From Octopus sinensis (taxonomy: Eukaryota): DNA of 64,000 nt. Below are positions 1 through 53,085 of this stretch, piece by piece. Within the stretch, counting starts at the first letter, position 1, and the number at the start of each line of letters is the position of its first letter. The notes below the pieces were generated by a model, which was not told the DNA's origin, did not search any database, and worked only from the letters and a program-made list of their open reading frames with translations. Position numbers and translations under genes: made by a program. The stretch is from positions 16,368,001 to 16,432,000 of the forward strand of contig NC_043020.1 in NCBI RefSeq assembly GCF_006345805.1, given 5' to 3'.

Positions 1-395
1 AGAAGAGACTTTCTCAACACCAGCACAGGCATGCTGCAACACATCTGATGGAGTCCCAAGACAGAAGGAAGATGGGACTTTCTCAAGATCACTAAAGGCA
101 TGCTGCAGCACATTAGTTGGAGTCTCAAGAGATAAGGGACATGAGACTTTCTCAAGATTAGTAGAGGCATGCTTCAGCATGTCGGATGGAGTTTCAGTAC
201 AGAAGAGATAAGACACTTTCCAAAGATCACCAACCACATGCTGAAGCACGTCAAAGAGACGCAGTCTCAAGAGAGAAGGGAGAGGAGGCTTTCTCAACAC
301 CAGCACAGGCATGCTGCAACACATCTGATGGAGTCCCAAGACAGAAGGAAGATGAGACTTTCTCAAGATCAGCAAAGGCATGTTGCAGCACTTAA
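1..395 (+). repeat. Tandem repeat with ~69-bp (23-codon) unit
   Basis: Unit starts (gagtc/cagtc...caaga) at 51, 120, 189, 262, 331. The segments 10-90 and 290-370 are nearly identical. Confidence 0.85.
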
Positions 396-1892: not shown

Positions 1893-2040
1893 TACTCTTT
1901 TACTTGTTTCAGTCATTTGACTGCAGCCATGCTGGAGCACCGCCTTTAATCAAGCAACTCGACCCCGGGACTTATTCTTTTGTAAGCCCAGTACTTATTC
2001 TATCGGTCTCTTTTGCCGAACCGCTAAGTAACGGGGACAC
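1893..2040 (-). mobile_element. SINE family A, 3' part
   Basis: Near-identical to the family A tail at 61528-61680. Confidence 0.85.
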
Positions 2041-2063
2041 ACACATATATATATATGTATATC

Positions 2064-2357
2064 GTGGCACTCCATCGGTTACAACGACTTTTCGTATGCA
2101 AACCGGTGGGGCTTGCTCTGAACACTCTAATTTTTTCACAGTGAACGTACCAGCTACCTCGGACACTCGGCGAAGAGCACCCTCGGAGGAACCATGTGAG
2201 CCAAAATGACCGGGAGGTGAACGCACTACAACACGAACGGCGATGCCCGACAACGCCTACCTTGTGGTTCCAGTTGATCCGATCAACAGAACAGCCTGCT
2301 TGGGAAATTAACGTGCAAGTGGCTGAGTGTTCCGTAGACACATTACCCTTAACGTAG
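2064..2357 (-). mobile_element. SINE family F 3' part, interrupted by an rRNA fragment
   Basis: gtggcactccatcggttacaacgac (2064-2088) continues as ggttccagttgatccgatcaac...cttaacgtag (2266-2357). The same family occurs at ~52010-52250 and 52575-52772. Confidence 0.7.
2089..2265 (-). pseudogene. 18S rRNA: 18S rRNA fragment (V4 / helix E23 region)
   Basis: The reverse complement of 2111-2181 reads GGTGCTCTTCGCCGAGTGTCCGAGGTAGCTGGTACGTTCACTGTGAAAAAATTAGAGTGTTCAGAGCAAGC. This matches the conserved eukaryotic SSU motif GGTGCTCTT..TGAGTGTC...ACGTTTACTTTGAAAAAATTAGAGTGTTCAAAGCAGGC. Confidence 0.8.
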
Positions 2358-9591: not shown

Positions 9592-9636
<45 letters not shown>

Positions 9637-9710
9637 AGTAAATATATATATGTATGTATATAGATGTATATATATATATGTGTGTGTGTGTGTGTATATA
9701 TATGTATATG

Positions 9711-9772
<62 letters not shown>

Positions 9773-9789
9773 CATATATATATATATAT

Positions 9790-9822
<33 letters not shown>

Positions 9823-9932
9823 GTGTGTGTGTGAGTATGTGCATATGTGTGTGCTTGAATTGTATGTGCGGGTGGCATTATATTTCAGATCACATTGTAC
9901 TCAAGTGAATATGGCATATAAATATATGCATG

Positions 9933-10001
<69 letters not shown>

Positions 10002-10013
10002 TATATAATATAT

Positions 10014-10087
<74 letters not shown>

Positions 10088-10130
10088 TGAATGTGAGTGT
10101 CTGTGCGTGTGTGTATAGGTATATATATAA

Positions 10131-10199
<69 letters not shown>

Positions 10200-10208
10200 A
10201 TATATATG

Positions 10209-10240
<32 letters not shown>

Positions 10241-10330
10241 ATATATATATATATACATATATATATTCATGTATGTTATATTTATATCTATATTAATGTG
10301 TATATGTGTATGTATCTATATTGTCATATA
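9500..10330. repeat. Compound (GT)n/(CT)n/(AT)n microsatellite
   Basis: Directly visible. Confidence 0.95.
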
Positions 10331-13305: not shown

Positions 13306-13362
13306 GTATCATTGTCATCTTCATCCTCATCATCACATTCACCATCATCGTCATTGTCGTCG

Positions 13363-13402
<40 letters not shown>

Positions 13403-13515
13403 AATCATCATCATCATCATCATCCTCATCATCACATTCACCATCATCGTCATTGTCGTTATCATCATCATCATCATCCTCATCATCACATTCACCATCA
13501 TCGTTATTGTCGTCG

Positions 13516-13564
<49 letters not shown>

Positions 13565-13652
13565 AATCATCATCATCATCATCCTCATCATCACATTCAC
13601 CATCATCGTCATTGTTGCTATCATCAACATCGCCATCATCATCATCATCATT

Positions 13653-13728
<76 letters not shown>

Positions 13729-13740
13729 CCATTATCATCC

Positions 13741-13784
<44 letters not shown>

Positions 13785-13804
13785 TCATCATCACCATTAT
13801 CATC

Positions 13805-13858
<54 letters not shown>

Positions 13859-13875
13859 CCATCATCATCATCATC
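13306..13875. repeat. ~570-bp (CAT)n microsatellite with a higher-order cassette
   Basis: cctcatcatcacattcaccatcatcgt(c/t)attgt recurs at 13325, 13424, 13478 and 13583. Confidence 0.95.
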
Positions 13876-21453: not shown

Positions 21454-21943
21454 TCATCATCATTGTTTGACCGTGGTCGAGACAATGGAATTTACCATGC
21501 TACGCCAGACTTCACGGTCCATCATGGCATTACGGAGGTCCTGTTGCTGGATGCCTGTATCCCTGGAGATTACATCAGGGTAGGAGAGTGTGTGCCCTCT
21601 GGTATTGCGAGTAGGTGGCTTCCAGAGGAGAAGAGTAGAAATTACTTCTTTTTCAGCTCTACAACAATGTCCAGCAAACTGGACTCTCCTACCTTTCACA
21701 AGAGATGACACAGGTGGTAGTTTCCCATATATTTGCGTTTTGGTTGGATGGCACTTCCACGAGAGATTTTGAGCTCTCATAAGGAGGCGAGTGTAGGTTC
21801 CATCCAACCGCCTCTCCAGCTTCTTTGATAACGTCCAGGTTTCTGAGCCATATAGTAGAATTGGTTCGACTGTGGCTTTGAATATTTCAAGTTTGAAGTC
21901 TCTACTTAGATTTGATGACCAGATCTTATGCATGTCATTACAG
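21454..21943 (-). mobile_element. RTE LINE (family RTE-1) 3' fragment with an open C-terminal ORF (21460-21933)
   Basis: ATVEPILLYGSETWTLSKK...RRVQFAGHC...AMMDREVWR are RTE RT thumb/C-terminal motifs. Confidence 0.9.
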
Positions 21944-22319: not shown

Positions 22320-22685
22320 AGACATGTGCATGTGTGTGTGTGAGTGTGTGTGTGTGTGTTTGTGTGTATGTGTGTGTGTATGTGTGTGCGTGTGCGTGTA
22401 TGTGTGTGCATGTGTGTGTGTATTTGTGTGTATGTGTGTGTGTATGTGTGTGCGTGTGCGTGTATGTGTGTGCATGTGTGTGTGTGAGTGTGAGTGTGTA
22501 TGTGTTTGTGTGTGTGTGTGTGCATGTGAGTGTGTGTGTGCATGCATGTGTGTGTATGTGTTTGTGTGTGTGTGTATGTGTGTGTGTTTGTGTGTGTGTG
22601 CAGGTGTTTGCGTGTGTGTGTGCATGTGTTTGTGTGTGTGTATGTGTTTATGTGTGCGTGAGTGTGTGTGTGTGTGTGTGTGCCC
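22320..22685. repeat. Imperfect (GT)n tract
   Basis: Directly visible. Confidence 0.95.
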
Positions 22686-29834: not shown

Positions 29835-30235
29835 GGTTGTGTGGTAAGTAGAAGCTTACCAACCACATGGTTCTGGGTTCAGTCCCACTGTGTGGCACCT
29901 TGGGCAAGTGTCTTCTACTATAGCCTCAGGCAGACCAAAGCCTTGTGAGTGGATTTGGTAGACGGAAACTGAAAGAAGCCCGTCATATATATGTATATAT
30001 ATATATATATGTGTGTATGTATGTATGTGTTTGTGTGTCTGTGTTTGTCCCCCCAACATCGCTTGACAACCAATGCTGGTGTGTTTACGTTCCTGTAACT
30101 TAGCGGTTCGGCAAGAGGGACCGATAGAATAAGTACTAGGCTTACAAAGAATAAGTCCTGGGGTCAATTTGCTTGATTAAAGGTGGTGCTCCAGCATTGC
30201 CGCAGTCAAATGACTGAAACAAATAAAAGAAAAAA
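29835..30235 (+). mobile_element. SINE family A, full length
   Basis: Matches the other family A copies end to end. Confidence 0.9.
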
Positions 30236-30764
30236 AAAGAAAAGAAAGAATTAATTAATTAATTAATTAATCCTCCTGTATTATCTTTTACCCAGGAACG
30301 TTTCAGCACCCTGCATGAATGTACTAAAGCTGGCCCTTTGTAATACAAATACAACTCATTTTTTGCCAGCTGAATGAACCAGAACAAAGTGAAATAAAGT
30401 GTCTTGCTCAAGGACACAAAACATCACTGGGAATCGAACACACTCTCTTACAATTGTGTTCCAAACACATTAACCACTAATCCATGCACTTGCATATGTA
30501 CAAATATACACACACATCAACAGACACATATGACTATACATATATGCACACTTACTCAAACATAGACATGTACATACACACATGCAGATACAAATACTGT
30601 TGTAAATATGCACAGAGATAGAGAGGAAGAGGAGGAAGAGAAAAAAAGAGAAAGAGAGAGGAGGGGCATTAAAGAAGTGTTACTATATGATTGTCTATTA
30701 CATCTGTACAACATATATTCATATCTATCACTGGCACAAATTTTTTTCTCTCCTTGTTTCTTTC

Positions 30765-35813: not shown

Positions 35814-38206
35814 ATATATGCATAATAGAGCTGTCTATGTATGGAACAAAAGCCCCCGCAGACACACAGCCTATACGAAGCACCCACCATCTCTCCAACT
35901 TAAACTTTCATAAAGCCAACTGGAAGTCGATTGAGAAAGAGATCCTCAAACAGGATTGGCCTGAATGTCTCTCCACACCGGACATAAACATGAAACACAA
36001 ACACTTCATGTCCATAATACAAGCCATATGTGACAAATATGTCCCAATGTGCAGGGCCAGCACACACAAGAATAAAAACAGGATCCCTAGAGAAGGAGGA
36101 TTCTTATGAGACGACGGACAAGGATTGCAAACCGCCTGAGCAAGCACACCAAAAGTGGTGAGAAGTCTCGGCTCGAAAGAATGCTAATGGAAACTGAGAA
36201 AAGTCTACATCAGTCCCATGAAAAGGAGAGAGCAGATAAAGAAGCTTGGGTAATAGAAAATATAAAATCAAACCCTAAAGCTTTCTTTAAGTTTGCCAAA
36301 GAGACAGCCACAGTGCACCAGAGAATAGGACCTCTCTTCCAAAAAGATGGCTCTCTCACAGGAAATCCCACGAGGATAAGTGAAATACTGAACGAACAGT
36401 TCCAAAGTGTGTTCACTACACCTCTAGGACACAGGCAAGTAAACAACCCAGAAGAATTCTTTGCCACTTTACCAGCGGCCAAAGAGACAAAAATTGAGTA
36501 CATCAACATCGAAGAAGATGATATCACACTAGCCATTGATGAGATTGACACAAACTCAGCTGCTGGACCTGATGGATTCCCAGCGATCCTTCTCAAATCG
36601 TGCAAACGAGCCCTTGCAAAACCGCTACAGCTTCTTTTTCAGAGCTTTCTTGCAAGTGGTAAGCTCCCAGTCAAACTGAAAGAGGGGGTAATATGCCCTA
36701 TCCATAAGGGAGGTAGCAGAGCAGATGCTAAAAATTATAGGCCTATCTCTCTGACCTCACACATCAGCAAAGTCATGGAACGAATAGTCCGTAAGAAACT
36801 AATCATGTTCCTTGAAGAAATGACTTACTGTCTGACACCCAGCATTGATTTCGACCAGGTAGAGGCTGCCTAACACAGCTCCTGCAGCACTATGACTGGG
36901 TGTTGAAACAGCTACTAAATGGCTCAAATGTGGATGTAATATATCTTGACTTTGCAAAAGCCTTTGATAAAGTCGACCATGGTATGATCTGTCATAAACT
37001 GCGTGGTCTCGGCATAGGCGGGAAACTTGGAGAGTGGCTGCACAACTTCCTAAAAGACAGAAAACAGGCAGTTGTGAGCAATGGAGCCACCTCCAGGAAA
37101 CGCAAATAACAAGCGGTGTCCCACAGGGCACTGTCTTGGGGCCACTGATGTTCATAGTGGCCCTTTCAGACATGCCTTCAGTTGCTACGATGACCACCCT
37201 TGCTAGCTATGCAGATGACACAAAGGTCTCCCACGCAATACAGAACCCTGAAAATATTGCGCATCTGCAACATGAGCTGGACACAATATACAGGTGGGCT
37301 GAGGACAACAACATGCAGTTTAATGCAGGTAAGTTCCAGGCCCTGCGCTACTGGCACACAAAGGTAAATGACGTGAAGACTGGATACACTGGCCCAGGAA
37401 GAATTGCAATCCCTGAGTCAAAATCAGTGCGTGACCTGGGCATTGACATGAGCAATGATGCATCTTTCCAAATGCATATTGCTAATCTGGTGATAAAATG
37501 CAGACGGCTAGCTGGATGGATTCTCCGAACTTTCAGAACAAGAGAGAAGGAGACACTGATGGTCCTATGGAAAACATTTGTCCTCAGCCGCTTGGACTAC
37601 TGCTCCCAACTTTGGTCACCACACAATATAAAACAAACAGCAGAACTCGAAGCAACTCAGAGAAGCTACACAAAGAAAATCGTCTCAATGCAAAATGTCA
37701 GCTACTGGGAAAGACTGAAGGTATTAAACCTCTTCTCCCTGGAGCGGAGGCGGGAGAGATATGCAGTAATATACATCTGGAAAATCCTGGAGGGTCTTAT
37801 CCCAAACTTTGGCATTCAAAGTTACTCCAACCGCAGAACGGGGCGCCGCTGCGTGGTGCCAAGGATTCCAACATCACCATCAAAATACAGGTCCAGATAC
37901 TGCAACAGCTTGGGTTTCAGAGGACCACAGCTTTTCAACATCCTCCCTAAATGCCTGAGAGACTTACATGGTGTGGATGTGGGTTTCTTTAAAACTAAAC
38001 TGGATCTCTTCTTGTTGAAGTCCCAGATGAACCTACCTCACGACAGGAGACGCGGATGCGGGCAGCAGCATCGAACTCCCTTGTTGATCAAGTGCCACGT
38101 ATCAGAGGTGGATTCACAAACTAGTGTGGCTCATTCAGCGGTGGTGCCCCAGCATGGCCGCGGCCTTCGGGCTAAAACATTTTTAAGGATTTAAGGATTT
38201 AAGGAT
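35814..38206 (+). mobile_element. 5'-truncated CR1-group (CR1/L2-like) LINE
   Basis: RT-encoding body, short 3' UTR with a stem-loop and a (TTTAAGGA)x3 tail, inserted in (TA)n. Confidence 0.92.
35837..38120 (+). pseudogene. LINE ORF2 (post-endonuclease linker plus reverse transcriptase), disrupted
   Basis: Motifs NYRPISLTSHISKVMERIV, DFAKAFDKVDH, SGVPQGTVLGP, YADDTK, YWERLK.LNLFSLERRR. Frameshifts near 36100, 36818, 37090 and 38015; in-frame TGA at 36846-36848. Confidence 0.92.
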
Positions 38207-39656: not shown

Positions 39657-39992
39657 GAAGGCACATGGCTCAGTGGTTAGAGTGTCAAGCTTATGATCGT
39701 GAGGTTGTGAGTTTGAATCCCAGACCAGGCTGCATGTTCTGTTCTTGAGCAAGACACTTTATTTCACGCAGCTCCAGTTCACTCAGCTGTAGAAATGAGT
39801 TGCGACATCACAGGTGCCAAGCTGTATCAGCCTTTGCCTTTCCCTTGGATAACATTGGTGGCATGGAGAGAGGAGGCTGGTGTGCATGGGCAACTGCTGG
39901 TCTTCCATAAAACAACCTTGCCCAGACTTGTGCCTGGGAGGGTAACTTTCTAGGTGCAATCCCAGGGTCAGTCATGACCAAAAGGGGTCTCA
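39657..39992 (+). mobile_element. tRNA-derived SINE, family D
   Basis: A-box TGGCTCAGTGG, B-box GTTTGAATCCC, cttgagcaagacac core shared with families F and G. Confidence 0.75.
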
Positions 39993-41559: not shown

Positions 41560-42103
<544 letters not shown>

Positions 42104-47159: not shown

Positions 47160-47259
47160 NNNNNNNNNNNNNNNNNNNNNNNNNNNNNNNNNNNNNNNNN
47201 NNNNNNNNNNNNNNNNNNNNNNNNNNNNNNNNNNNNNNNNNNNNNNNNNNNNNNNNNNN
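47160..47259. other. Assembly gap (100 N)
   Basis: Run of N. Confidence 1.
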
Positions 47260-48320: not shown

Positions 48321-48963
48321 CCCTTTAGTGTTCACATTATTCTGCCAAAACTAATGCTTTTTTATCCACATTGTTTTGAACTAATCTTGTAGCTATGAGA
48401 TTTTGATGAGGTAGCTGTTGATTTTTAAAACGATATTGTAGGGTTGGTCTGAGAGACCAGATCTGGCCAGTTTGAACATAGAACAGGCAGAATACTTTTG
48501 GCCGGATATGGCCAGTTTAAATGCATTATCTTGTAGCTATGAGATTTTGATGAGGTAGCTGTTGATTTTTAAAACGATATTGTAGGGTTGGTGTGAGAGA
48601 CCAGATCTGGCCAGTTTGAACATAAAACAGGCAGAATACTTTTGGCCGGATATGGCCAGTTTAAATGCATTATCTTGTAGCTATGAGAATTTGATGAGGT
48701 AGCTGTTGATTTTTAAAACGATATTGTAGGGTTGGTCTGAGAGACCAGATCTGGCCAGTTTGAACATAAAACAGGCAGAATACTTTTGGCCGGATATGGC
48801 CAGTTTAAATGCATTATCTTGTAGCTATGAGAATTTGATGAGGTAGCTGTTGATTTTTAAAACGATATTGTAGGGTTGGTGTGAGAGACCAGATCTGGCC
48901 AGTTTGAACATAAAACAGGCAGAATACTTTTGGCCGGATATGGCCAGTTTAAATGCTAAAGGG
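48321..48963 (+). mobile_element. piggyBac-type MITE with 4 tandem copies of a 144-bp internal segment
   Basis: Ends CCCTTTAG...CTAAAGGG|TTAA; units start at 48384, 48528, 48672 and 48816. Monomers at 53086-53309 and 60001-60220. Confidence 0.9.
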
Positions 48964-51153: not shown

Positions 51154-52344
51154 TATATACCAGGAAAGGTCTCAGAGAATGGTTAAGTGACCAAACACTG
51201 CAATATGTCAATGCACGCGGATAGGAAGATCAAGACAAATTGACCAGATATTGTTTTCTAATCCTACCAAGAAATAAAAGATCTTATTTCTTGAAAATAC
51301 AGAGAAATTTCTTGAATATAAGTATCTAGAAATAAAAATAACTTGAAGCTGAAAGCAGAACAATTCCTTTAATAATAGGTGCCTTGCGAAAGAAGATAAA
51401 AATATACAGATAATTGCATAACCCAAACCCAAGATATACAAATAAGTGCAAAATATAGAAAAAGCACTGTGCAGAGATAACGGAAAGTATTTTCATTACT
51501 GTAAAATTAACATATACAAAACACAACACTCTTCACACAGAAGGCATGTTTGTGTTCATTTGTGCAGTGAAAGCATTCAATAAAAGACTACTGAATGATG
51601 ATGATGATGGAGGAGGATTTGCAGAACTGCTCACCCAAATGTGGAATGTGCAATGATTCAGATGAGACCTTAACTCACATTGTATTAGAATATCCACAGT
51701 TAGCTCAAAATGAATATAAAATATAGGGATAATAATAGTATAGGCATGCAATAATTCGCAAGAATATTTGCAAGTGATTTGGTTTCGCATCCATAGGAAA
51801 ACACTATAAATGTTTTATATAAATAAAAATGCAAACCCTTGGAAACAGTGAAGTGAAATTGTGGTGAGCGAGATTTTGTTATGCAATCCTAAAATAAGAA
51901 TTGTACGCAAAAGGCTGGTCAATGTAGTCATTGACATGAAGAAATCATTTGCTACCGGAACAAGAAGAAAACAGAATAATAAACTGGTACTCGATCAGGT
52001 ATGACAACGAGTGTTCCAGTTGATTTGATCTGCAGAACAGCCTGCTTGTGAAATTAACATACTCGTAGCTCAGCACTCCATAGACCCACGTACCCCCAAC
52101 ACAGTTCTCAGGGAGATTCAGTGTGACATAGAATGTGATGAGCCTGGCCCTTTGAAATATAGGTACTACTCATTTTTGCCAGCAAAAAAAAGGGGACTAG
52201 AGCAATGTGAAATAAAGTGTCTTGCTGAAGAACATAACACTCCATCTGTTATAACAATGAGGGTTCAATTGATCAATGGAACAGCCTGCTTGAGAAATTA
52301 ATGTGAAAACGGCTGAGCACTCTGTAGACACACATCATTATCAT

Positions 52345-52560
52345 CATCATCATCATCATTGTTTAACGTCCGTTCTCCATGCTAGCATGGGTTGGACGTT
52401 TCGACCGGGGATCTGGGAAGCCAGAAGGCTGCACCAGGCTCCAGTCTGATCTGGCAGTGTTTCTACAGCTGGATGCCCTTCCTAACGCCAACCACTCCGT
52501 GAGTATAGTGGGTGCTTTTTACGTGCCACCTGCACAGGTGCCAGGCGAGGCTGGCACGTA
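52345..52560 (-). mobile_element. Family E element
   Basis: Near-consensus tail. Confidence 0.9.
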
Positions 52561-52574
52561 CCCATAATATAGTT

Positions 52575-52772
52575 TTCAGAGTGATTCAGTGTAACTCAGA
52601 ATGTGATATGGCTGACCTTTTGAAATACAGGTACTGCTCGTTTTTGCCAGCAGAGTGAACTGGAGCAATGTGAAATAGTGTCTTGCTCAAGGACACAACC
52701 TGCTGTTGGATGTTGAACTCACAACTTCATGATTGTGGGCTGAATACCCTAACTACTAAGCCACACACCTTC
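52575..52772 (-). mobile_element. SINE family F 5' half
   Basis: The reverse complement has a tRNA-like head and ccttgagcaagacac core. Confidence 0.7.
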
Positions 52773-53085
52773 ATAAGTAGTATATTATTCCAACTTGAAG
52801 TATGACTTCCTTAAGTAATGGATAGTTTAGCAAAGTCATGATACCGCCAATTATTATTATAAGAGCCTTGGGAACAGTGACAAAACATCTGAGCACAAAT
52901 CCGAGCGTCTGGAAGTAGGTGCAATGCTGTAAACATGCCCACCAGGTTCAGCAAAAATAATCCGGGAAGTTTTCATTACAAAGTAAGAACGGATATGAAG
53001 ATGAGAAAAATATTTCTTATACAAAAGTTACAAAATGCTTCTCATTGTAGACCACTAGCTATGTTTCAGTTGGAAGTATATTTAA

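What the first reader, a model, noticed from the sequence alone, without database searches (positions are those of the whole stretch)
2064..2357. 18S rRNA V4 fragment spliced into the 3' end of a SINE (SINE-rRNA-SINE chimera)
Seen: 177 bp of GC-rich sequence (2089-2265) sits between two contiguous parts of the family F tail, replacing ~3 nt, with no TSD. Its reverse complement contains the universal SSU motif ...TGAAAAAATTAGAGTGTTC.... The SINE and rRNA are in the same sense orientation. Inference: the RT switched template from SINE RNA to ribosomal RNA and back during target-primed reverse transcription, consistent with retrotransposon RNPs forming at ribosomes. An alternative is capture during DNA repair.
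Basis: partly seen in the sequence, partly recalled or inferred. Interest (0 to 1): 0.7.

Follow-up and report, generated by a model that had tools for sequence, protein, structure and literature searches.

The report
18S rRNA fragment inside a SINE
A 177-base piece of small-subunit ribosomal RNA sequence really does sit inside the tail of an old, truncated SINE copy, most likely as a patch used to mend a DNA break, which makes it a minor curiosity of a known kind.

Summary
On the + strand, 2063-2088 is the last 26 nt of a tRNA-derived SINE. 2089-2265 is a 177-nt foreign insert (GC 54% against 38% for the window). 2266-2357 continues the same SINE exactly 3 nt (GAG) further on. There is no target-site duplication and no poly(A). 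The SINE and the insert are both in sense on the - strand.

Positions 2089-2181 are demonstrably 18S-derived: the 3' side of V4 plus the next conserved helix, Rfam SSU_rRNA_eukarya positions 737-807. A pattern taken from the insert hit only true 18S genes, 11 of 11. The other 84 nt (2182-2265) lie where hypervariable V4 should be, but I could not verify them because no cephalopod 18S was reachable.

The window holds no second copy of the insert or of its junctions.

The mechanism is not shown. SINE sequence resumes 3 nt from where it stopped, with a micro-deletion and no TSD or poly(A). That is what an insertion into an existing DNA copy produces (a double-strand-break patch, or class-2 templated sequence insertion; about 0.55). 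It needs a return to the same RNA within 3 nt. Interest is low to moderate.

The parts
2063..2088 (-). The last 26 nt of the tRNA-derived SINE ('family F'), with a complete 3' end. In SINE sense it reads GTCGTTGTAACCGATGGAGTGCCACG.
   Evidence: It aligns with the same end of the copies at 51987 and 52238. That end is constant among copies while the other end varies. The A/B-box heads of related copies lie at the far end on the - strand.
2089..2181 (-). The part of the insert shown to derive from eukaryotic 18S rRNA: the 3' side of V4 and the following conserved helix, in rRNA sense on the - strand.
   Evidence: Rfam SSU_rRNA_eukarya model 737-807, 19.8 bits, E 8.6e-4. A degenerate pattern taken from 2123-2181 hit 11 metagenome contigs, and Rfam places every hit inside a true 18S gene. 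Identity to them is 80-82% over 71 nt. The hairpin GCAAGCC-CCACC-GGUUUGC is a base-pair-compensated version of the universal GCAGGC...GCCUG helix.
2182..2265 (-). The remaining 84 nt of the insert (its 5' part in rRNA sense). It is presumed to be hypervariable V4 of the source 18S, but this is not verified.
   Evidence: It is contiguous with the verified part and lies where V4 helices E23 should be. It lacks the conserved GTAGTTGGATC that precedes V4. Local alignment to the V4 of 11 non-cephalopod 18S genes is no better than shuffles (best z 1.66). It shares ACCTCCCGGT with L007 at a comparable position.
2266..2357 (-). Continuation of the same SINE, 92 nt, resuming 3 nt (GAG on +, CTC in sense) beyond the break. 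The copy is 5'-truncated at 2357.
   Evidence: BLAST to 52013-52088 (79%) and 52271-52332 (82%). Similarity to the other copies ends at ...CCCTTAACGTAG.
1895..2062 (+). A neighbouring, unrelated SINE in the opposite orientation, with a (CA)n(TA)n tail. It abuts the 3' end of the family F copy and hides any target-site duplication of the whole element.
   Evidence: Read directly. A reverse-complement copy of the same element lies at about 30150-30215.
51987..52790 (-). Two further family F copies used as the uninterrupted reference. Copy 1 is 51987-52238 and is 5'-truncated. Copy 2 is 52238-52790 and carries another SINE nested at 52333-52560.

Best explanation
An old, 5'-truncated genomic copy of a tRNA-derived SINE later suffered a double-strand break 26 bp from its 3' end. 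The break was sealed by end joining with a 177-bp filler copied from 18S rRNA. The filler was either a cDNA of an rRNA fragment or a piece of rDNA. Three bases of the SINE were lost in the process. This makes it a class-2 'templated sequence insertion', that is, an rRNA pseudogene fragment, and the matching orientation of SINE and rRNA is a coincidence.

Shown: the anatomy, the 18S origin of at least 93 nt, the 3-nt loss, and the absence of a TSD and of poly(A).

Inferred: that the SINE copy was already in the DNA when the fragment arrived, and that repair was by end joining.
For: The flanks are contiguous apart from a 3-nt deletion. No TSD and no poly(A) flank the insert. At 177 nt its size falls in the 73-414 bp range (median 191) of experimentally produced break patches, which likewise show micro-deletion and lack TSD and poly(A) (PMC5110952).

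The donor is the most abundant cellular RNA and a multi-copy, break-prone locus; this rests on established knowledge. The window holds one copy of the insert and of its junctions, as expected of a one-off event. Roughly one 5'-to-3' template jump would yield A-B, whereas A-B-A with resumption 3 nt away follows automatically from a DNA-level insertion.

A rough prior from the literature points the same way. The catalogue in PMC13174262 lists 18 28S/LINE-1 chimeras, all with the rRNA at the 5' side. In Magnaporthe there was 1 tripartite chimera against 33 bipartite ones.
Against: Nothing here shows that the SINE copy pre-dates the insert. I could not obtain an orthologous empty site, the host 18S, or a SINE consensus to compare ages.

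The same-sense orientation is required by the RNA-level models and has only a 50% chance under this one. The break lies between two predicted hairpins of the SINE RNA, a place where RNA cleavage or template exchange would also be plausible.
Confidence: 0.55

Rival explanations
1. Single-event chimera made during target-primed reverse transcription. The LINE reverse transcriptase copied the last 26 nt of the SINE RNA and jumped to an 18S rRNA fragment. It copied 177 nt of that, jumped back to the SINE RNA 3 nt upstream of where it had left, and stopped early, which gives the 5' truncation at 2357. A close variant: the SINE RNA was cut between two hairpins and an rRNA fragment was ligated in before reverse transcription.
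For: SINE and rRNA are in the same sense, which these models require. The SINE 3' end is complete and its 5' end is truncated, as in a normal TPRT product. rRNA/LINE chimeras exist and are mostly in sense: 28S/LINE-1, n=18, median 269 nt, 83% sense, attributed to RNA ligation or template switching (PMC13174262). Double template jumps are documented (PMC2104539). The break point lies in the linker between two predicted hairpins of the SINE RNA. The conserved 18S sequence just 3' of the fragment (G[T/G]TGCATGG in the comparison genes) could give 1-4 nt of microhomology with SINE GTCG.
Against: It needs a second jump that returns to the same RNA within 3 nt. Described chimeras are A-B or A-B-C, with the extra RNA at the 5' side. 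No TSD brackets the whole unit, although a neighbouring SINE at 1895-2062 may have destroyed it. There is no second copy in the window. The microhomology cannot be checked without the host 18S.
Confidence: 0.22
2. The rRNA fragment entered a source (master) copy of the SINE, by either route above, and the chimera was then retrotransposed. On this reading the window copy is one member of a chimeric subfamily.
For: The copy has the hallmarks of a retrotransposed SINE, with a complete 3' end and a 5' truncation. An insert 26 nt from the 3' end leaves the terminal sequence available for the LINE enzyme.
Against: Neither of the other two family F copies in the window has the insert, and neither junction recurs. 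A 177-nt structured insert inside the tail might disturb recognition by the partner LINE. I had no genome-wide data.
Confidence: 0.1
3. Assembly or library artefact: live rDNA sequence wrongly joined into a SINE.
For: The assembly has at least one gap (100 N at 47160-47259), so it is scaffolded and repeats are a risk.
Against: It would take two false joins with no shared sequence between SINE and rRNA, and they would have to restore the SINE 3 nt further on. Only an internal 177-nt piece of 18S is present.
Confidence: 0.05

Closest known systems
Class-2 templated sequence insertions (double-strand-break patches derived from reverse-transcribed RNA or distant DNA; Onozawa & Aplan, PMC5110952)
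   Same: Size (177 nt against 73-414, median 191), no TSD, no poly(A), micro-deletion of the target, and a donor that is a distant, highly expressed sequence.
   Different: Those were described in human cells and human polymorphisms. Here the host is a presumed octopod, the donor is 18S rRNA, and the target happens to be a SINE. Pre-existence of the target was not shown.
28S rRNA/LINE-1 and other small-RNA/LINE-1 chimeric insertions (PMC13174262); bipartite and tripartite LINE-mediated chimeras (Buzdin/Gogvadze, PMC2104539)
   Same: An rRNA fragment of a few hundred nt fused in sense to a retroelement copy. The mechanism proposed for those is template switching or RNA ligation.
   Different: In those, the foreign RNA sits at the 5' side of the retroelement and the whole unit is bracketed by TSDs. 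Here the rRNA is internal (A-B-A), the SINE resumes 3 nt on, and no TSD is visible.
Dispersed rRNA pseudogene fragments (the SSU-rRNA / LSU-rRNA hits of repeat annotation)
   Same: An isolated internal fragment of rRNA sequence away from the rDNA array, with no function expected.
   Different: None in kind. This one is only conspicuous because it landed in a recognisable repeat, so the empty site can be reconstructed.
rRNA-derived SINE families (5S-derived SINE3, 28S-derived SINE28)
   Same: rRNA sequence and SINE sequence in one element.
   Different: In those families the rRNA part is the 5' head (5S-derived heads carry the promoter) and the element is multi-copy. Here the rRNA piece is near the 3' end and no other copy is seen.

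Membership tests
Eukaryotic SSU (18S) rRNA-derived sequence (Rfam RF01960) | Match to the SSU_rRNA_eukarya covariance model | tested here: met
   2089-2159 on the - strand, model 737-807, 19.8 bits, E 8.6e-4 when the insert is searched alone. This is below the gathering score of 50, and it was not found in the whole-window or 801-nt searches, as expected for a 71-nt fragment.
Eukaryotic SSU (18S) rRNA-derived sequence (Rfam RF01960) | Homology to real 18S genes at one consistent position | tested here: met
   A pattern with 45 specified bases taken from the insert hit 11 contigs. All hits lie inside Rfam-confirmed 18S genes at the V4 3' border. Identity is 80-82% over 71 nt.
Eukaryotic SSU (18S) rRNA-derived sequence (Rfam RF01960) | The whole 177 nt matches the host's own 18S | not testable with these tools
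   No cephalopod 18S could be reached. The 84-nt 5' part is not significantly similar to non-cephalopod V4.
LINE-mediated chimeric retrocopy (template switch or RNA ligation) | Components in the same sense | tested here: met
   rRNA sense is the - strand. SINE sense is the - strand (constant end at 2063, variable end at 2357).
LINE-mediated chimeric retrocopy (template switch or RNA ligation) | The whole chimera bracketed by one target-site duplication | tested here: inconclusive
   No shared bases between 2040-2062 and 2358-2380. Another SINE and its microsatellite tail abut the 3' end, so a TSD may have been displaced.
LINE-mediated chimeric retrocopy (template switch or RNA ligation) | Foreign RNA joined at the 5' side of the truncated retroelement (A-B or A-B-C order) | tested here: not met
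   The order is SINE-rRNA-SINE, with resumption 3 nt on.
LINE-mediated chimeric retrocopy (template switch or RNA ligation) | Both parts inserted at the same time (same presence or absence across species, same divergence) | not testable with these tools
   No orthologous locus, host 18S or SINE consensus was available.
Class-2 templated sequence insertion (break patch) | No TSD and no poly(A) at the insert | tested here: met
   The edges are ACAACGAC|TTTTCG... and ...CCTTGT|GGTTCC. The 3' end of the insert in rRNA sense is GAAAA, which is not a tail.
Class-2 templated sequence insertion (break patch) | Micro-deletion or microhomology at the target | tested here: met
   GAG is missing relative to the two other copies. 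Microhomology cannot be judged without the donor sequence.
Class-2 templated sequence insertion (break patch) | Insert size of about 70-400 bp from a distant donor | tested here: met
   177 nt, with an rRNA donor (range from PMC5110952).
Class-2 templated sequence insertion (break patch) | The target existed intact before the insertion (empty allele or orthologue) | not testable with these tools
   No second assembly or related species was reachable. Ten ORFs around the site are absent from the protein collection.
rRNA-derived SINE family | rRNA part forms the 5' head (as in 5S-derived SINE3 and 28S-derived SINE28); many copies | tested here: not met
   The rRNA piece is 26 nt from the 3' end. 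There is no other copy in 64 kb. The genome-wide count was not testable.

The most novel reading that the evidence does not exclude
The SINE-rRNA-SINE unit was made in one retrotransposition event. Either two template jumps occurred, or an 18S fragment was ligated into a cleaved SINE RNA held in the same particle. This would be a first A-B-A retro-chimera and a physical trace of a SINE RNP assembling on or next to the small ribosomal subunit. It could also be the founder of a chimeric subfamily.
Probability: 0.2. Interest if true: 0.55.

Novelty: new member of a known kind. Interest (0 to 1): 0.3.

Why it matters
If it is a repair patch, it is one more dispersed rRNA pseudogene fragment. It is useful mainly as a clean example, because the SINE lets the empty site be reconstructed to the base (3-nt loss, no TSD), and because it suggests that RNA- or rDNA-templated break patching operates in cephalopod germ lines.

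If it were instead a single retrotransposition event, it would show that the partner LINE's reverse transcriptase can leave a template and return to it. It would also show that 18S rRNA is within reach of the SINE RNP, which bears on the idea that SINE RNAs capture the LINE enzyme at the ribosome. A genome-wide census of rRNA fragments inside SINEs and LINEs (orientation, distance from 3' ends) would decide which reading applies, and it is cheap to run.

Tried and rejected
- **Rfam, broad searches.** The whole window at gathering threshold gave nothing, and an 801-nt E-value search missed the fragment. Only a search of the insert alone found SSU_rRNA_eukarya.
- **Six-frame protein search.** A translation of the insert was searched against 5.8 billion proteins, to catch spurious ORFs on cephalopod rDNA. 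Nothing scored at E <= 0.01.
- **Exact patterns.** A 26-mer from the variable part found 0 hits in metagenome contigs. A 36-nt pattern found 0 hits in prokaryote genome contigs.
- **ORF look-up.** Ten ORFs around the site, three of them spanning the insert, were looked up exactly in order to reach the same locus in other assemblies. None is in the collection.
- **LINE RT ORF as a handle.** The ORF at 37034-38194 was used to fetch octopod DNA. The best named relative is from Argonauta hians (61%). Its 21-kb locus and a 2-kb ENA contig contain no family F SINE and no insert-like sequence.
- **tRNA detection.** ARAGORN found no tRNA in the window. The Rfam tRNA match to SINE heads is only weak (12.9 bits, E 3), so orientation rests on A/B boxes, head homology and the constant 3' end.
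- **RNA folding.** The insert is not more stable than shuffles (z -0.37 in sense, +1.70 in antisense).
- **Upstream 84 nt.** Local alignment to non-cephalopod V4 is not significant.
- **Literature.** Searches for an internal rRNA insert in a SINE, or for cephalopod V4 data, found nothing directly relevant.
- **Rejected: rRNA-derived SINE family.** The rRNA piece is in the wrong position and no other copies were seen.
- **Rejected: fragment of an rDNA-specific LINE co-transcript.** There is no LINE sequence next to the insert.

Full report
**What is there**

The first 2.4 kb of the window is a cluster of abutting SINEs of different families. The window holds two more copies of this family, at 51987-52238 and 52238-52790. 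The second has another SINE nested at 52333-52560.

Both of those copies read straight across the point where the copy at 2 kb is interrupted. When the two flanks of the 2-kb copy are joined and aligned to them, a 3-nt gap (GAG) is left. Between the flanks lie 177 nt (2089-2265) with 53.7% G+C, against 37.8% for the window. No bases are duplicated at the two edges, there is no A-run tail, and no other part of the window resembles the insert or its junctions.

**Orientation**

The three family F copies share the end at 2063 / 51987 / 52238 and differ at the other end: truncated at 2357, truncated at 52238, full length to about 52790. This is the pattern of retrotransposed copies with a fixed 3' end and variable 5' truncation.

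The far end of the full-length copy is homologous, in reverse orientation, to a tRNA-like SINE head at 39666-39720 on the + strand. A related copy at 30317-30419 is followed by an A-box/B-box pair on the - strand at 30484-30430. That scan found 14 such pairs in the window, against about 0.25 in shuffles. ARAGORN and the Rfam tRNA model are of little help here. The SINE therefore reads in sense on the - strand, and 2063 is its 3' end.

**Identity of the insert**

The reverse complement carries TGAAAAAATTAGAGTGTTC at 2120-2138. Rfam finds nothing at gathering threshold or in an 801-nt search. When the insert is searched alone, 2089-2159 on the - strand matches SSU_rRNA_eukarya model positions 737-807 (19.8 bits, E 8.6e-4).

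As an independent test I wrote a pattern from the insert (2123-2181) with 45 specified bases and 14 free ones and scanned the metagenome collection. It matched 11 contigs. In every one the match lies inside a gene that Rfam calls a complete or near-complete eukaryotic 18S rRNA, at 900-1760 bits. The insert is 80-82% identical to them over 71 nt. A BLAST of the whole window against these rDNA contigs finds that stretch and nothing else.

The hairpin that follows, GCAAGCC-CCACC-GGUUUGC, is the universal GCAGGC...GCCUG helix with a G:C pair replaced by A:U on both sides. This suggests that the departures from the universal sequence were already present in a working rRNA and are not decay.

So 2089-2181 is 18S-derived, in rRNA sense on the - strand, which is the same sense as the SINE. 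It covers the 3' side of V4 up to just before the conserved GCATGGAATAAT.

The other 84 nt (2182-2265) lie where the hypervariable V4 helices belong, and they lack the conserved sequence that precedes V4. Their similarity to the V4 of the 11 non-cephalopod genes is no better than that of shuffled sequence. Calling them 18S is an inference from contiguity.

**What I could not get**

Neither the host's own 18S nor an orthologous locus was reachable.
- A six-frame protein search of the insert, exact DNA patterns in the metagenome and prokaryote collections, and exact look-ups of ten neighbouring ORFs all returned nothing.
- The LINE reverse-transcriptase ORF at 37034-38194 has its best named relative in the octopod Argonauta hians (61% identity). 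That fits my recollection that these SINEs are octopus SINEs.
- The Argonauta locus and a short ENA contig contain no family F element.

The relative age of insert and SINE, the microhomology at the junctions, and the copy number in the genome therefore remain open.

**Mechanism**

Three routes give this structure.

(a) Insertion into a SINE copy already in the DNA. A double-strand break 26 bp from the SINE's 3' end was sealed by end joining with a filler copied from rRNA or rDNA, with loss of 3 bp. This automatically gives flanks that continue each other. It matches the published signature of class-2 templated sequence insertions: 73-414 bp (median 191), no TSD, no poly(A), and micro-deletion or microhomology (PMC5110952).

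rRNA/LINE chimeras do exist. The 28S rRNA/LINE-1 set has n=18, median 269 nt and 83% in sense, and is attributed to RNA ligation or template switching (PMC13174262). Double jumps are also documented, with 1 tripartite against 33 bipartite chimeras in Magnaporthe (PMC2104539). All of these are A-B or A-B-C with the extra RNA at the 5' side. None returns to the first template.

(c) Cleavage of the SINE RNA and ligation of an rRNA fragment before reverse transcription. The break point lies between two predicted hairpins of the SINE RNA, but that is weak support.

Sense orientation is obligatory for (b) and (c) and has a 1-in-2 chance for (a). Resumption within 3 nt is automatic for (a) and needs a special assumption for (b). 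Taken together with the rarity of double jumps, I put (a) at about 0.55, (b) and (c) together at about 0.22, a chimeric master copy that was then retrotransposed at about 0.1, and an assembly artefact at about 0.05. The rest is left unassigned. No TSD brackets the whole 295-bp unit, but a neighbouring SINE with its microsatellite tail abuts the 3' end and could have displaced one, so that test is inconclusive.

**Comparison with what is known, and novelty**

As a break patch, this is a new member of a known kind: a dispersed rRNA pseudogene fragment, or templated sequence insertion. It is notable only because the target repeat allows the empty site to be reconstructed. It fails the defining layout of LINE-mediated chimeras, where the foreign RNA sits at the 5' side. 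It also fails that of rRNA-derived SINE families, where the rRNA forms the 5' head and the element is multi-copy. The most novel reading the evidence does not exclude is a single-event A-B-A retro-chimera. It would be moderately interesting for the question of where SINE RNAs meet the LINE enzyme.

**Verdict**

Interest is about 0.3. The decisive tests are alignment to the host rDNA with an age comparison, the orthologous site in related octopods, a genome-wide junction search, and an orientation census of rRNA fragments inside retroelements.

Noticed in passing
window 36106-38194 (+): A LINE reverse-transcriptase gene split into two ORFs (255 aa and 386 aa), so it carries at least one frame break. 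The best named relative is a hypothetical protein of the octopod Argonauta hians (61% identity, Pfam RVT_1). It could be a partner LINE for local SINEs, but its 3' end shows no similarity to the family F tail.
   Followed up: partly
window 47160-47259: A run of 100 N, that is, an assembly gap. The window therefore comes from a scaffolded assembly.
   Followed up: no
window 48384-48956: A tandem array of four 144-bp units at 98% identity (TRF score 1111). It is a young minisatellite of unknown origin.
   Followed up: no
window 1-391: A tandem array of 5.6 units of 69 bp at 71% identity, running off the start of the window. It overlaps an ORF (169-663) with a repeated arginine/glutamine-rich motif.
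   Followed up: no
window 52333-52560: A SINE of another family, with a (GAT)n-type tail, is nested inside family F copy 2. Copy 1 and copy 2 of family F lie head to tail with no spacer at 52238.
   Followed up: partly
whole window: There are 14 A-box/B-box pairs with tRNA-like spacing, against about 0.25 in shuffled sequence. This means at least 14 tRNA-derived SINE heads in 64 kb, from several families, some sharing a head and central domain (for example 39657-39990, 30317-30484, 52561-52790).
   Followed up: partly
window 9617-10293, 13315-13875, 22325-22682, 41590-42103: Long microsatellites: (TA)338, (TCA)187, (TG)n and (TCTA)127. They account for most of the long 'ORFs' in the window.
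   Followed up: no
window 21460-21933 (-): A 157-aa ORF whose sequence looks like the C-terminal part of a non-LTR retrotransposon ORF2. It was not searched.
   Followed up: no
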